Both the position numbers and the translations under genes were made by a program. Source: Takakia lepidozioides (Eukaryota > Plantae > Bryophyta). Taken from it: 64,000 bases of DNA. How positions within the stretch are numbered: position 1 is the first letter of the stretch; each line of letters begins with the position of its first letter. Positions 46,377 to 55,168 of the stretch are shown in pieces. The notes under the pieces are model-generated. The model made no database searches, was not told the origin of the DNA, and worked only from the letters and a program-made list of their open reading frames with translations. Location of the stretch: assembly GCA_030704615.1 (NCBI GenBank), contig CM060732.1, forward strand, positions 78,058,001 to 78,122,000, read 5' to 3'.

Positions 46377-48704
46377 TCATTCCGCTTCCAAGCCACCGCG
46401 AAGAATTGAGATTTGACCATCTCTGAGCAGTATATCTTCATCAAGTTGCCGCACTCGCCGCCGCAACATCTCCACCTCCAGACTCAAATGAAGTGCTTCC
46501 CGGCCCACAGCCTTGGCCTCCTGTTGCATCTCATTTCGCTCTCTCGACACGCGATTTAGCTCTTCCCTCCCTTTTTCCACCACGTCGGAGAGGTCCTCCA
46601 AAGCGATCTCCAGCAATCTCACTGCCTCTTTCCTTTCACCAAGCTGCTGCTCAAGCTGAGAGATCCGAAGAGAAGCATCCGCTAGCAAGAACTGCAGTTT
46701 CTTCCCATCCACTACTAGTCCATCATCATTCTCAAGCTTGGAGGTCACTTGTGGATGACACTTTTCCAGGGCTGCCTCCATTATTATCACCTTCTCCCTT
46801 AGCATCTGACAGCTCAAATTTCGGGCTTCCATCTCTTGTTCCCATTCCTCTAGTTGCTCTTTCACTTGTTTCATCTCTCTCTCTGCCTTCTCCTTACTGT
46901 GAACAGCTGCTGCGATCTCTTTGTGGAGATCTTCGATTTGTTTGGTCTGCGACCGGGACAATCTGTTCGAGTCTCGGGCTTCCATCTCTTGCTCCCATTC
47001 CTCTCGTTGCTCTTTCATTTTGTTCATCTCTCGCTCTGCCTTGTGCTTGCTCTCGACAGCTGCTGCAATCTTTCTGTGGAGGTCCTCTATTTGTCTGGTC
47101 TGTGACTGGGACAACCTGGCAAGCTCCTCATTTTCGGCAAGAACGCAGTCATCGACAGTTGTGGCGAAATTGCTTATTGTCTTTTCCAGACTGCAGATCA
47201 GCTCATCTTTCCTCTCGCTTTCAACCCTTGCTTGCAACAGCTTCGCCTCGTACTGCAAGAGCCTATCGGACATCATTTCCACCCTTCTATTCATGCTGTG
47301 TAACTGTCGTGTTGACACCTGCATAGTTTCCCCCATCCCACGCTCCATATTCTTACCAGTTTCGGCCTGGACTTCCTTTCCCCGTTCCTTATCAGTTCCG
47401 CCAGGAGCAACTGCGGCTTTCTTTCTTTCCTTCCGTAGTACATCTCTCGATATGTGACTGCCTGTTGCACAGCACCCCTCGCCTTGCTTTACTTGTTTAT
47501 GCGCTTGTCTCTCCCTTGCTTGCAGAGTATTAACTCGACCTCTGCGAAGCTCTTCCCGCAAGCGTTTGTTTTCTTCTTCTAACTTCAATGCAAAACCTTT
47601 TTCAGGGTTTCTAATGGCCTCTACCATGTTCACTTTCTCTCTCATCAGTACTCTCAACTTAGCAGTCAGCAAATTGTTCTCCTCTTTCAGCTCAGCAGCT
47701 TTAGCCTGAAGTTGATCAAATTCTGCTTGCAATTCCTTGTGTAATTTATTCAGGCAAGCGTCACTTTCCCCATTACGTCGCTTCTCCGACACAATCTTGT
47801 TCTCACATTGCAAGAGATTTGTTTCACCCGTAAAAGCCTCTCGCTCTCCTCTCAATTGAATCTCCGCTCCGTTCTGCATGTGCTTTTCCCTTTGGGAGGG
47901 ACTCCTCTCTTGATCGTTCTTGTCCATGCCATTCTTGATCCCTTGCTGCAGGCTCTGTATCGTCTTCTCGTGGTCTATGCAAAGACCCTTCAACCTATCC
48001 ACCAGATTTTGCAGGTGCTTTGTCTCTCCATCTTTCTCCTGGAAAACCTTTTGGAGCGCTTTCAGATCCGCTTGCGCTTTTCTGGCTTGTTCGTAACTGT
48101 GTGCCGCTGATTGCCTTAGTTCTAAGATAGTCTTCTCTGCTCTCTCCATCTTCTTTCTGTGCCCATCCATTTGCGACTGAAACTCCCATAATCTCTCCAT
48201 TAAAAGAGCTTCTTGCAAGGTCACGTTGGCAAGATCTTCGGGCAAAATGTTTTCGTCTTTCACATTTGTTACTGTGTCGCGCAGGCAGCTGTCATCAACC
48301 GGCCTTTCCTCCGTCTTGGACCCCGAGGCATTCTCCAGAGGCCACGGTCCCTCCTCTCTTCTTGCAAACTGGTCCAGACTCGTGTTCACCTCCACATTCT
48401 CCTTCCCTACTGATTGCGATGTCATTGCTAAGGTCTCAATTGCAGCCCTGCGTATCCTCCTATCAGAGCTAAACTTTACCTTCTTTCTTTCTTTCTTTCC
48501 TTTCTTACCATCTTGTACGCTTCCAGTTAGTCTCCAGTGTGCATCGTCGATACCCTGAAGCTCACGATCATGTCCTAGAACAGGTGCTACTTTAATTTTG
48601 TTCCTCAGATCAAGCAGTTCAATATCATCATACACTTGTTGTACGTTTGGCAGACGGTCCTCCAGAAGGCCACCTTTATCCTCGTTATGGTTGCTAGATT
48701 CCAT
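46377..48704 (-). CDS. Intronless long coiled-coil protein (At3g55060/At2g39300-like family) with an internal 51-aa tandem duplication
   Basis: 775-aa ORF rich in E/K/R/Q heptads. C-terminal LEVEMLRRRVRQLDEDILLRDGQISILR and LCIDHEKTIQSLQQG resemble that family (recognised from memory). Confidence 0.8.
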   Translation of the reverse strand: MESSNHNEDKGGLLEDRLPNVQQVYDDIELLDLRNKIKVAPVLGHDRELQGIDDAHWRLTGSVQDGKKGKKERKKVKFSSDRRIRRAAIETLAMTSQSVGKENVEVNTSLDQFARREEGPWPLENASGSKTEERPVDDSCLRDTVTNVKDENILPEDLANVTLQEALLMERLWEFQSQMDGHRKKMERAEKTILELRQSAAHSYEQARKAQADLKALQKVFQEKDGETKHLQNLVDRLKGLCIDHEKTIQSLQQGIKNGMDKNDQERSPSQREKHMQNGAEIQLRGEREAFTGETNLLQCENKIVSEKRRNGESDACLNKLHKELQAEFDQLQAKAAELKEENNLLTAKLRVLMREKVNMVEAIRNPEKGFALKLEEENKRLREELRRGRVNTLQARERQAHKQVKQGEGCCATGSHISRDVLRKERKKAAVAPGGTDKERGKEVQAETGKNMERGMGETMQVSTRQLHSMNRRVEMMSDRLLQYEAKLLQARVESERKDELICSLEKTISNFATTVDDCVLAENEELARLSQSQTRQIEDLHRKIAAAVESKHKAEREMNKMKEQREEWEQEMEARDSNRLSRSQTKQIEDLHKEIAAAVHSKEKAEREMKQVKEQLEEWEQEMEARNLSCQMLREKVIIMEAALEKCHPQVTSKLENDDGLVVDGKKLQFLLADASLRISQLEQQLGERKEAVRLLEIALEDLSDVVEKGREELNRVSRERNEMQQEAKAVGREALHLSLEVEMLRRRVRQLDEDILLRDGQISILRGGLEAE

Positions 48705-49962
48705 AATGAACTAGCAGTCTGAATTGTTCATCTTCGGCTGAGTGCTGAGTATCCAGCCATTTCTGCGAACTTGGATGTGTTATGGGGATCTTACATGAGA
48801 AAAAGCGAAAAGAAGCCTGAGGTAAGGAGGTAGATCCAGGCTATGTACATGAATAGAGAGCCCAGGACGAACTGTAAAATTTGAGCTGAACAGACATGAG
48901 AGTTCGGATGTGAAAGGCAAGCGCTTATGGCAGGCTGCGAACAAAAAGGACGGACCTCAACCACTTGTTGTCATAATGAAGGAAACAGACAAGAATCAGC
49001 GCTGTTGATTGAACAAGAAAAGAAGAGAGACATCACATGACGTACATCCTCCACGAAGAGAAACAACTGTAGTCGAGAAGGGAGGATCAAGAAAGTTTTC
49101 TAAGTCTAACCGAGACAGGGCTATGGATTCCAGCAGGAAAAGAAAAGAGAGGATCGAGCATCCATCAAGGCTAGCGCGAAGATTGTGGGCCACTGCATTC
49201 CTTCACCAATATTGCACTCCACTTGATCACAGCGCCGTTCGCCCGCATGCTACTCCAATAACTAAGATACAGTTACATGGGTTCTGAACAGCACAGCAGG
49301 AAAGGCGCAAGAGAAGGGCTCAGATCATCGAAAGCTATTATGGAGATTGAAATTCTTTGCATCTCTTCACTATCCCCCGCTCATTGATTTCATCACAGCG
49401 GCCTTCCGTAGGAGAGCTCCGGTAGCTGCTTCGTCCTCTGCAGCTTCTCTCGTCGAAAAACAAGCAACGCACGCGCTATCCGGTAAACATCATTCAAAAT
49501 TTTGACCGTTCCTCTACCCTAACGAATTCATCCTTTTCTGCAAATTACCGTCAGGGCACAACCCACGATTTTCTCCACCCAAGATGTCGAAATTTTATTC
49601 CCCGGGCCCTTACCCACCATGATGGCAACCTCCAACTGATAAGTTAATAGATTGCGCTTGCCAGATGTCGGTGGCTCTAAGTAGACCGTCAACAGTCACT
49701 CCATAATCAGTCAGCGGGAAGAGGGGCTAATGATTCTGCTCCTCTCGAAAGAGCAACTTCTCCTATGATGTCCGTGGTCTCTCTCCCCCAAGTCTATCAA
49801 AATCCTCTCTGCCTCCTCCTGGGTATTAGTACATACCGTATGCACACGTTTGCTCTCTCTGTCTCTTACATTATTCTGTTTTGAACAAGCTACAGTTCAA
49901 GGAGGACTATATCACTATATCACGTGTAAGCACAACACTGTCAGTGAAGTACAAGGGGAAAC

Positions 49963-52019
49963 ATGGGAGAAGCCATGAATGCAGCGCTGGAGGCTCTCAA
50001 AAAAGGACAATGTGTAGCCATACTCGATTCGAAATCGCGAGAGGCAGAGACTGACCTGTTCTTCCCCGCCGGGAGTCTCTACCCGCTCTCTCTGCGTACC
50101 CTTCGCACGCAAGCTGGTGGGGAGCTCTACATTTCTGTTGGCCATGAAGTCGCCAACTCTTTTGGCTTCCCATTCATGGGCGAGGTACTCATATACTAGA
50201 GACTCTAACAAAGTGCATGTAGAGTTAAGCTCTACAGCAGAAACAGGCTAGCTCTGAGGGTCATTACTGACCATAGCGAACTCTATCAAGATCACGTACA
50301 GTACGCTACGCAGGCTTGACAGTTGAAAAAACGAAATTGAATTGATACAAGTACAATGCATCTGCTGATCCTGCTTCTCGTGAAGGTCAAAAAATTCACA
50401 AGGGACGCGAGCAAGATAACCTTCTTTAGTGGAGTCAAAACTGGTGAATCGAACATGTATCTTGGCCTAGTGACCGTTGGTCCCCTACTGCTGCAGTTCT
50501 TTCTGAGACCTTGTCAATTCTGATTACTGAAAGAGTATGAATGTGGCCTTCTAAGAGCTCATGTATTGATGGTACTTGTACACTTACAGAAGAAATTGAA
50601 ATCGTGCCAATACATAGCATCTACAATGTCTCACATGGCCAAAACCATTTGATCTATCAAACAACTGTAGAGCTGTTGGCTTTCATAATGGAAGTGTCTA
50701 ACCAGAATTTGCTTCGAACCCGTCCTTGCATTTGAGCATACATAATGCCCAGGCTATACAGTGTGGTGGCAAACAAATTCAGGTCTATAGGAGATCAGGT
50801 AGAACTCAGTTTGAAGAGGCTTTTGTTCGTTTTTACCCTTCTAATTCTTTGACTGTAAAGTCCAAATGCCTGTTATTGAACTCTCTTGCCATGACAATCT
50901 ACCATCATACCATTCAGGATCGCCAAAGGAGGGCCTGCCATTCAGTGGCATTTCTCTTGATAGCAAAGTATAATTCTGTGTTCTGCAGGGTGTCAGTTAC
51001 ATGCTTGTAGAACAATTTGCTGGCACTCATCTGTAAGTCAGCATCATCACTCTCTTCTCTTTGAAAGGCAGCCTCCAATGTTCTTCTGCCCATGCATTTG
51101 AAGTTATTCCCCCCATTTTCAAGAGACCTGTTTTAAGGCATCAAAACATATTGCTGTTAACCTACATTACTGGGCACTGTGATTACTTTTTGTTGCAGCT
51201 CATAAAGATACCTAGTTGCCTGCTGTCTGTCTACCTCTCTCTCATCAGGTACTTGCACACACAGACTTGGCAGAGAAGTACCCCATTTTTCAGCGTATGG
51301 GAAAGGAGAGGAATGGCATGTGCCAAGGTTCTTGCTCAGTGGGGTTCTCTCTTGACCATCGGAGCTTGAAGACAGGGGCCCCGGATGTGGAGAGAAGTTT
51401 TACATGCCGACGGCTGGCAGAGCTGTCTAAGGAGGTTGTGGATGGCAGGGTTGAGAAGGACGAAGCTGCGCAGCTTTTTGGGAAGGAGTTTCACACTCCA
51501 GGCCACATCTTTCTGTGTGTAGAGAATGAACGGGGGTTGGAAGCTCGCTCTGGACACACAGAGCTTTCGGTAGCGCTTGCACGAGCAGCTGGCATCATAC
51601 CTATCATGGTATGGTTGTTGTCAATTATTCTTCCTAAATTGGTAAAGAATCTGCTCACTCGTTTCTGTGTCACGTTTGAAATTGGCCAGATAATATTATC
51701 TTGCAAGGCTTTGGCGGTGAGTATAATAGGATTTTGGCACTCTCTTGTGAATGAGGCCTGAACAGCAACCCAGGTATGTCAGATTCATCTCCCTATGAGA
51801 TGTCAATTTGGTCACACCAATCCATTTCTAAGGTGAAAAAACAATTGTCTCTAGGTTGGGTGTGTCATGTTGTGCAATGATGGCGAGGAGTTCGGAGCCC
51901 TACCCCCGGAAGCTGCTCAAGCTTGGGCAGCAAAACATGGTGTCCCATTCTTAACAGGGCAAGATATCATGGTGTCACTCAAAGGAGCAACAGACACCCT
52001 CTTGAAAAATGTTCACTAG
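49963..52019 (+). CDS. ribB: Stand-alone 3,4-dihydroxy-2-butanone-4-phosphate synthase (RibB)-like protein, archaeal type, 248 aa, 3 exons
   Basis: Exons 49963-50184, 51249-51608 and 51855-52019 (GT-AG, all phase 0). Motifs ALEALKKG, DSKSREAETD, AGG, GFPFM, SLDHRSLKTG, FGKEFHTPGH, RSGHTELSVALA, WAAKHGVPFLTGQDI. Confidence 0.88.
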
Positions 52020-52743
52020 GTGTCCACTCTGGTCACATCAATTCATCGACAGTAGGCAAGTGGTGGGCTATTATTGGATTAGGAGGTATCATTGTGTTTC
52101 TTGGCATCATCTTGGCCTCTCTGCCTTCTATGCTGATGGAGCTGACTCTCATAAAAGGCAAGTTCTCTTGGGGAGGACCCCAATTATTATGATGCTTGTT
52201 GTCTGCAATGTCTGCTGAAAGCTTTGTGAGTAGTCCAAGTTTCCACCCAAAGAAACACAAGGACTAAAGCTCAGTTCTGGCATTCAGCCTGTGCTCAAAT
52301 CAAGGGACCGGTCACAAGTCACAACCTGGAATGCCAGTCATTGAATACTTCCACTTGGTCATTGAGATTTCAGACCACCAGGGTTTACAGACTCATTCTG
52401 AATGCACACGGTCGGTGACAAATCAATTCTAACAATCTTCAGACAACAATGGAAGGCTTGGTAACTCATCCTCCAAGATACTGAAATTCACACGTGTCAA
52501 GCACATTGTGTGTGTTGGCTGCAGGTGTCACTCCAAGAGCACAAAACAGCATCCAAGTTTGATCAGTTGTCATAGCAGGTTGCATATCAAAAGAGTAACC
52601 ACGGCAACAAAGGATGGAGCTCCACATTGAGGTTAGGACTTTTCCTGGACATTTCAAAGTAATCTCCGAACTACCTAGAGTTGAACAAACCAGAAGCTAT
52701 TGAAGCTGAATTCACATGGAACAGTAGAAAGAGAGGGCTTTGG

Positions 52744-55168
<2,425 letters not shown>

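What the first reader, a model, noticed from the sequence alone, without database searches (positions are those of the whole stretch)
49963..52019. Archaeal-type, stand-alone RibB (DHBP synthase)-like gene domesticated with spliceosomal introns
Plants make DHBP with plastid-targeted bifunctional RibBA proteins. This 248-aa protein is monofunctional and has an in-frame stop just upstream (49945-49947), so no transit peptide is evident. It follows the methanogen-type RibB pattern as I recall it (AIEALKKG, DSDEREGETD, AGG, GIPFM plus the archaeal insertion, INHRKTFTG, FGKEFRSPGH, RQGHTE) with ALEALKKG, DSKSREAETD, AGG, GFPFM, LDHRSLKTG, FGKEFHTPGH, RSGHTE. Two GT-AG introns and plant neighbours (DIM1, coiled-coil gene) argue against contamination. 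It is a candidate archaea-to-plant horizontal transfer and a possible extra-plastidial riboflavin-precursor or ribulose-5-phosphate-utilising activity.
Basis: partly seen in the sequence, partly recalled or inferred. Interest (0 to 1): 0.88.

Follow-up and report, generated by a model that had tools for sequence, protein, structure and literature searches.

The report
Archaeal-derived vitamin B2 enzyme in liverwort
This is a real, spliced liverwort copy of a riboflavin-pathway enzyme gene that green plants got from archaea long ago, a transfer already reported in moss in 2012; new here are a likely marine-archaeal donor and a rebuilt active site whose chemistry is untested.

Summary
Observation confirmed: three exons (49963-50184, 51249-51608, 51855-52019), 248 aa, PF00926. 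Both GT-AG introns are seen spliced in a public run; the unspliced leader holds in-frame stops, so no transit peptide. The archaeal origin is right but already published: Yue et al. 2012 (PMC3493653, Table 1) list the moss ribB as from Euryarchaeotes. The gene belongs to one old family found in chlorophytes, Zygnematophyceae, liverworts, mosses and Selaginella, with no seed-plant name among the hits; moss and Selaginella also have the normal RibBA. Added here: (1) the nearest prokaryotes are Marine Group II archaea (Poseidoniales, 42%), not methanogens; three of four trees group them (91/90 to 100/99), AU tests do not reject alternatives. (2) The family keeps the metal ligands and phosphate site but replaces Cys55, Tyr95 and Glu185 (M. 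jannaschii numbering) and gains an invariant Glu54, probably next to the lost Glu. (3) Several chlorophyte members have transit-like extensions; land-plant members have none. Best reading: a cytosolic Mg-dependent ribulose-5-phosphate enzyme, probably still a DHBP synthase; a different product is not excluded.

The parts
49963..50184 (+). Coding exon 1 (aa 1-74): acidic loop D22, R26, E27, E29, D31; family-specific E54 and Y56
50185..51248 (+). Intron 1, 1064 nt, phase 0, GT-AG; absent in Calypogeia and Physcomitrium
51249..51608 (+). Coding exon 2 (aa 75-194): remodelled lid loop (M98, C99, Q100, C103), D110, T116, H160, R174, H177, T178
51609..51854 (+). Intron 2, 246 nt, phase 0, GT-AG; same position as the single Calypogeia intron
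51855..52019 (+). Coding exon 3 (aa 195-248 and stop): G196 and V198, the latter in place of the conserved Glu
49744..49962 (+). 5' leader seen unspliced in an RNA-derived contig (true start unknown); in-frame stops at 49882, 49927, 49945
49765..49884 (+). Upstream ORF of 39 codons inside the leader, in the frame of the gene; function not tested
52020..52067 (+). Start of the 3' untranslated region as far as the contig reaches
46377..48704 (-). Divergent neighbour: 775-aa coiled-coil ORF (context only)
52744..55168 (-). Convergent neighbour: multi-exon RrnaAD/DIM1-type rRNA methyltransferase (context only; limits approximate)

Best explanation
The gene is this liverwort's inherited orthologue of the archaeal-derived ribB already described in Physcomitrium. 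It entered the green lineage at or before the chlorophyte-streptophyte split from a Thermoplasmatota archaeon, most likely related to Marine Group II (Poseidoniales), then changed quickly and was conserved thereafter. The protein has the RibB fold, would bind Mg2+ through E27 and H177 and the sugar phosphate through R174/H177/T178, and most likely still turns ribulose 5-phosphate into DHBP plus formate, with the new E54 standing in for the lost Glu (V198) from the neighbouring strand. Without a transit peptide it would act in the cytosol, beside the plastid RibBA. Shown: gene model, splicing, family, fold, residue pattern. Inferred: donor order, strand geometry, activity, compartment.
For: Splicing and leader. 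Orthologues at 60-72% identity from chlorophytes to Selaginella. dN 0.20 with saturated dS against Calypogeia. Model of the Calypogeia orthologue: pLDDT 87.7, Z 30.9, rmsd 1.7 A to 1PVY, 5 Z units above any bacterial or fungal RibB. Poseidoniales are the best prokaryotic hits (197 bits against 149 or less for methanogen-like rows) and sit in riboflavin operons. Green + Poseidoniales + Rhodelphis: 91/90, 100/99, 100/95 with a bacterial outgroup; 9 columns shared by green and Poseidoniales alone, against 1 and 3 for other archaeal groups. Metal ligands equivalent to V. cholerae Glu39 and His154 (PMC9305975) are kept. Phe at the Cys55 position occurs in operon-encoded Thermoplasmatota enzymes, so Cys there is probably dispensable. 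In 309 sequences exactly one of positions 54 and 198 is acidic; pair 56-196 ranks 20th of 23,477 in coupling analysis and 54-198 is in the top 2%, fitting an antiparallel register.
Against: No activity or localisation data. Glu185 and Tyr95, present in all archaeal rows of the 50-row set, are replaced. The Calypogeia orthologue is below the TIGR00506 cut-off (134 against 177 bits). DHBP is used in the plastid, and moss and Selaginella already have RibBA (PMC3509567), so a cytosolic copy has no obvious partner. AU tests do not reject green outside the Thermoplasmatota group (p 0.12) or outside all archaea (p 0.27); a quick 102-row tree left the long green stem unplaced. The 54/198 pattern rests on about two independent events, and the only other group showing it is not in riboflavin operons.
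Confidence: 0.6

Rival explanations
1. Same origin, new chemistry: the rebuilt active site still binds Mg2+ and a pentose phosphate but releases another product, for instance the 2,3-diketone first intermediate of the RibB reaction, or uses another sugar phosphate.
For: About eleven positions conserved in archaea are differently conserved in all green members, clustered in the lid loop and catalytic strands; long stem branch followed by conservation; redundancy with RibBA; cytosolic in land plants; the unrelated prokaryotic group with acid at 54 and no Glu at 198 lies before a TPP-dependent E1 alpha/beta pair in both contigs read. The diketone is an observed RibB intermediate (PMC9305975).
Against: All of D22, R26, E27, E29, D31, T116, H160, R174, H177, T178 are kept and D110 matches the bacterial/fungal Asp; the prokaryotic group also lost the Asp30 equivalent, which the green family keeps; several chlorophyte members carry transit-like extensions, pointing to the plastid where riboflavin is made.
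Confidence: 0.25
2. A catalytically dead RibB-fold protein that binds sugar phosphate or metal as a sensor or scaffold.
For: Loss of Glu185, Tyr95 and Cys55 equivalents; several Sphagnum copies and the Rotaria copy are degenerate.
Against: Both metal ligands, the His-Asp pair and a new invariant Glu are conserved across green algae and land plants, which a dead enzyme would rarely keep.
Confidence: 0.08
3. Not a direct archaea-to-green transfer: the gene came down from an older eukaryote ancestor (Archaeplastida or earlier) or through another eukaryote, and was lost widely.
For: Rhodelphis marinus has a Poseidoniales-like copy with a 72-aa extension; green + Rhodelphis is not rejected (p 0.35); green-type copies also occur in a dinoflagellate and a bdelloid rotifer.
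Against: The copies group within Thermoplasmatota in the three better trees; Rhodelphis lacks the green active-site changes and is closer to Poseidoniales (51%) than to the window protein (34%); the rotifer and dinoflagellate rows nest inside the green clade; no other eukaryote groups were named among hits.
Confidence: 0.15
4. Contamination or assembly artefact.
For: None found.
Against: Spliced contigs, an intron position shared with Calypogeia, sister position to Calypogeia in trees, GC like the rest of the window.
Confidence: 0.01

Closest known systems
Physcomitrium patens ribB of euryarchaeal origin (Yue et al. 2012, PMC3493653, Table 1, Fig. S13)
   Same: Stand-alone PF00926 protein; the Physcomitrium protein found here (P0006) is 64% identical, has the same E54/Y56/MCQ/V198 pattern and no N-terminal extension. 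That P0006 is the protein in the paper is inferred, as the supplement is not held.
   Different: The moss gene has no introns; the paper's main text gives only 'Euryarchaeotes', 'riboflavin biosynthesis' and no Arabidopsis homologue, with nothing on donor order, active site or compartment.
Methanocaldococcus jannaschii DHBP synthase (PDB 1PVW, 1PVY, 1SNN; PRK05773 type)
   Same: Fold (Z 30.9, 219 residues, 1.7 A), archaeal insertion, acidic loop, His147, Arg161, His164, Thr165 equivalents.
   Different: About 30% identity; Cys55 to Tyr, Tyr95-Asp96 to Met-Cys-Gln, Asn106 to Asp, Glu185 to Val, Leu53 to Glu.
RibB of Poseidoniales (Marine Group II archaea)
   Same: Highest prokaryotic identity (42%); aromatic residue at 56 with Gly at 196; nine further shared columns.
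   Different: Keeps Tyr95 and Glu185 equivalents; encoded in an operon with a CTP-transferase-like gene, riboflavin synthase and lumazine synthase.
Plant RibBA (Arabidopsis RIBA1-3; PMC3509567)
   Same: Contains a DHBP synthase domain of the same fold.
   Different: Bifunctional, plastid-targeted, bacterial type; RibBA profiles score 43-76 bits against 120-134 for stand-alone and archaeal profiles.
Fungal RIB3 (PDB 1K49, 1TKS)
   Same: Stand-alone eukaryotic DHBP synthase (cytosolic by my own knowledge).
   Different: Lacks the archaeal insertion; 58-64 bits against 151 for the archaeal enzyme.

Membership tests
RibB / DHBP synthase (PF00926, TIGR00506) | Pfam PF00926 above cut-off | tested here: met
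   exons 1 and 2 separately
RibB / DHBP synthase (PF00926, TIGR00506) | TIGR00506 equivalog cut-off (177.45 bits) | tested here: not met
   134 bits for the Calypogeia orthologue; Poseidoniales 175 is also just under
RibB / DHBP synthase (PF00926, TIGR00506) | RibB alpha+beta fold | tested here: met
   model of the Calypogeia orthologue, Z 30.9 to 1PVY
RibB / DHBP synthase (PF00926, TIGR00506) | Metal ligands Glu (loop 1) and His (GHTE) | tested here: met
   E27, H177
RibB / DHBP synthase (PF00926, TIGR00506) | Acidic loop, phosphate site and His-Asp/Asn pair | tested here: met
   D22, R26, E29, D31, R174, T178, H160, D110, T116
RibB / DHBP synthase (PF00926, TIGR00506) | Conserved active-site Glu (Mj Glu185), Cys (Mj Cys55), Tyr (Mj Tyr95) | tested here: not met
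   V198, Y56, M98/C99; E54 is a possible stand-in
RibB / DHBP synthase (PF00926, TIGR00506) | Ribulose 5-phosphate to DHBP + formate activity; homodimer | not testable with these tools
   needs assay
Archaeal-type RibB (PRK05773 / 1PVW type) | Insertion after the GxP(F/Y) motif, HR motif, best scores to archaeal profiles and structure | tested here: met
Archaeal-type RibB (PRK05773 / 1PVW type) | Grouping with archaeal rather than bacterial-type rows | tested here: met
   bacterial-type rows split off at 100/100; a position outside all archaea is not rejected by AU (p 0.27)
Green-plant archaeal-derived ribB (Yue et al. 2012) | One clade with the Physcomitrium-type proteins, shared E54/Y56/MCQGxC/V198 pattern | tested here: met
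   100/100; motif table
Plant RibBA | Fused GTP cyclohydrolase II domain | tested here: not met
   stop at 52017-52019 lies inside the spliced contig
Plant RibBA | Plastid transit peptide | tested here: not met
   unspliced leader with three in-frame stops; rare splice forms would not show in contigs
Plant RibBA | Nesting among plant RibBA sequences in a tree | not tested
   no plant RibBA sequence was available by reference; unnamed bacterial-type rows and profile scores were used instead
Fungal RIB3 | Closest similarity to fungal enzymes | tested here: not met

The most novel reading that the evidence does not exclude
The green-lineage family is an archaeal RibB, taken from a relative of marine Group II archaea, that was rebuilt into a different pentose-phosphate enzyme (catalytic acid moved to the neighbouring strand, lid loop rewritten with two cysteines) and moved from plastid to cytosol in streptophytes, making a product other than DHBP, such as the 2,3-diketone phosphate; a parallel change in an unrelated prokaryotic group linked to TPP enzymes would point to an undescribed pathway.
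Probability: 0.2. Interest if true: 0.8.

Novelty: new member of a known kind. Interest (0 to 1): 0.42.

Why it matters
It is the only archaea-derived family among the 57 transferred families in the 2012 moss survey, and I found no paper that characterises the protein. If it makes DHBP, seed-free plants have a second, extra-plastid entry to the riboflavin pathway and the enzyme is a natural test of what the conserved Glu does in RibB. If it does not, it marks an unknown cytosolic pentose-phosphate reaction kept across green algae and early-branching land plants. The Poseidoniales link would tie the transfer to planktonic marine archaea. The transfer itself is not news.

Tried and rejected
Joined model: shared databases were searched exon by exon by reference and the joined protein was never sent to a search or folding tool; the Calypogeia orthologue P0001 stood in for folding and whole-length profile scores. 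I did build the joined frame inside scripts, for the frame check and for local alignments, local BLAST and trees against proteins already fetched. For the exon 2 search I gave the natural ORF 51216-51758 with residues 12-131 so that full-length relatives passed the length filter. Exon 3 alone hits no profile. The careful 102-row tree did not finish. A neat Cys/Tyr swap (55 and 95) was considered and dropped: the lid loop aligns either way. An N-terminal extension from the upstream ORF was considered: no such joint is seen. Repeats in the locus are chance-level. Papers on mutagenesis of Glu185, Cys55 and Tyr95 were not held, so their roles rest on my own knowledge. No paper links Poseidoniales, green algae and riboflavin transfer. 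Gene structures for Chromochloris and Selaginella were not on record. The coiled-coil neighbour did not name the host.

Full report
Observation. The three exons join in phase 0 through GT-AG introns of 1064 and 246 nt into a stop-free frame of 248 codons, with an in-frame TGA at 49945-49947. Exons 1 and 2 each pass the PF00926 cut-off and each finds the M. jannaschii DHBP synthase first in the PDB. Contigs of one public run lie on 49744-50182, 51247-51607 and 51854-52067 and skip both introns exactly. The run is only guessed to be RNA, but spliced joints can only come from RNA. The leader is unspliced from 49744 and holds in-frame stops at 49882, 49927 and 49945, so a transit peptide would need a splice form that was not seen. 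The gene lies between a coiled-coil gene and a DIM1-type gene at ordinary GC.

Family. Exon 2 and a profile of its hits retrieve a compact family: Calypogeia (72% to the window protein), Ceratodon, Physcomitrium (64%), Sphagnum, Selaginella, Closterium, Mesotaenium, a row with a Spirogloea-style gene id, Chromochloris (61%), Scenedesmus, Tetraselmis, Prasinocladus, a pedinophyte, Pseudoscourfieldia and Prasinococcus, plus a bdelloid rotifer and dinoflagellate TGD. No seed plant, fern, hornwort or Marchantia name appeared; that is absence from ranked lists, not proof. The window protein is sister to Calypogeia in the trees, which fits a liverwort host. Against Calypogeia dN is 0.20 and dS is saturated. 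Calypogeia has only intron 2 and Physcomitrium none, so the introns are lineage-specific.

Prior knowledge. Yue et al. [quoted passage not shown] Their supplement is not held, so I cannot say how wide a distribution they showed. Physcomitrium, Selaginella and Chlamydomonas have canonical RIBA, and Arabidopsis RIBA proteins are plastid-targeted (PMC3509567). So the transfer is known and the gene is an extra copy of the fold.

Donor. After the eukaryotic rows, the best hits are Poseidoniales (Marine Group II) proteins at 41-42% and 197 bits, ahead of methanogen-like rows at 149 or less. Their genes lie in operons with a CTP-transferase-like gene, riboflavin synthase and lumazine synthase. They belong to a Thermoplasmatota group with Phe at the Cys55 position and Gly two places before Glu185; the green family has Tyr and Gly there. 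A 50-row mixture-model tree puts green + Poseidoniales + Rhodelphis at 91/90 inside that group at 100/98. Dropping the remodelled columns gives 100/99 under LG+G4 and 100/95 with a bacterial-type outgroup. Nine columns are shared by green and Poseidoniales alone, against one and three for the other archaeal sets. Against this, a quick 102-row tree left the long green stem unplaced, and AU tests do not reject green outside the Phe group (p 0.12), outside all archaea (p 0.27), or together with Rhodelphis (p 0.35). Rows left out of the smaller trees were the long and compositionally odd ones and near-duplicates; many archaeal rows are unnamed and no Asgard or plant RibBA row was labelled. I put an archaeal source at about 0.9 and a Poseidoniales-related donor at about 0.7.

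Active site. A model of the Calypogeia orthologue (pLDDT 87.7) matches 1PVY at Z 30.9 and 1.7 A. The two metal ligands named for V. cholerae RibB, Glu39 and His154 (PMC9305975), are kept as E27 and H177, with D22, R26, E29, D31, T116, H160, R174 and T178. The family as a whole replaces Cys55 by Tyr, Tyr95-Asp96 by Met-Cys-Gln, Asn106 by Asp and Glu185 by Val, and gains an invariant Glu at 54. That Glu185, Cys55 and Tyr95 are active-site residues is my own knowledge of the M. jannaschii work; those papers were not held. In 309 aligned sequences exactly one of positions 54 and 198 is acidic: 266 have Glu at 198, 40 green-type rows have Glu54/Val198, three unrelated prokaryotic rows have Asp54/Ser198. 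These are about two independent events. Coupling analysis ranks 56-196 at 20 of 23,477 pairs (14 without green rows) and 54-198 at 493; both sum to 252, as an antiparallel register would. I infer, but could not measure, that E54 sits beside the lost Glu.

Mechanism. Most likely the dimer binds ribulose 5-phosphate and one Mg2+, which does much of the chemistry as a Lewis acid (PMC9305975), and releases DHBP and formate, with E54 taking the place of Glu185. Five chlorophyte-like members carry 45-105 residue Ser/Thr/Ala/Arg-rich, acid-poor extensions while streptophyte members have under 30 residues, suggesting a move from plastid to cytosol; no targeting predictor was run. The main rival is a new product. 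Its best support is indirect: both contigs read for the Asp54/Ser198 prokaryotic group place the gene directly before a TPP-dependent E1 alpha/beta pair, not riboflavin genes, but that group also lacks the Asp30 equivalent, which the green family keeps.

Method note. Shared databases were searched exon by exon by reference; the joined protein was not sent to any search or folding tool, and that step is left out. The joined frame was used only inside scripts, against sequences already fetched.

Verdict. Real gene, right origin, already published as a transfer; a new member of a known family. The donor refinement and the rebuilt active site appear unreported in the library searched and give a cheap, decisive experiment. 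Interest 0.42.

Noticed in passing
L091:4001-6524 and L092:6001-8583 (proteins P0251, P0258; also P0243): A divergent prokaryotic RibB-like group (35-41% identical to each other) with Asp at window position 54, Ser at 198 and no Asp30 equivalent lies directly upstream of a TPP-dependent E1 alpha/beta pair in both contigs read, with a PRPP synthetase nearby in one: possibly an undescribed, non-riboflavin pentose-phosphate pathway.
   Followed up: partly
L004:8001-8789 (P0049); L009:3958-4746 (P0288): The bdelloid rotifer Rotaria sp. Silwood2 carries an intronless green-type copy among animal-like genes, with altered GHTE and TGAP motifs; a closely related environmental copy has intact motifs. 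Probably a secondary transfer from a green alga.
   Followed up: partly
P0136 (EukProt, Rhodelphis marinus): Rhodelphis has a Poseidoniales-like RibB (51% identity) with a 72-residue N-terminal extension and without the green active-site changes: a second archaea-to-eukaryote transfer, a shared Archaeplastida origin, or prey contamination.
   Followed up: partly
P0058 (Dinoflagellata sp. TGD), P0053-P0055, P0037: A long-branch green-type subgroup with a 102-residue extension in TGD; by my own knowledge TGD has a green-algal plastid, so endosymbiotic transfer is plausible.
   Followed up: no
P0023, P0024, P0039 (Sphagnum): Several Sphagnum copies have lost acidic-loop and GHTE residues and look to be decaying.
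   Followed up: no
window 49765-49884 (+): A 39-codon upstream ORF with three in-frame ATGs lies in the transcribed leader; possible translational control.
   Followed up: partly
window 46377-48704 (-) and 52457-55168 (-): The 775-aa coiled-coil ORF starts about 1.3 kb from the ribB start in divergent orientation and contains a short internal duplication near its C-terminal third; the DIM1-type gene's transcript contig reaches to 52457, about 390 nt from the ribB contig end.
   Followed up: no
P0138 (409 aa), L079, L089: Some Thermoplasmatota fuse RibB to the CTP-transferase-like (FAD synthetase-type) domain that follows it in the operon.
   Followed up: no
L001:7176-7781 versus L007:6230-7232: Poseidoniales operons use the bacterial-type riboflavin synthase (PF00677), whereas another Thermoplasmatota-like contig has two lumazine-synthase-fold genes, the archaeal arrangement.
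   Followed up: no
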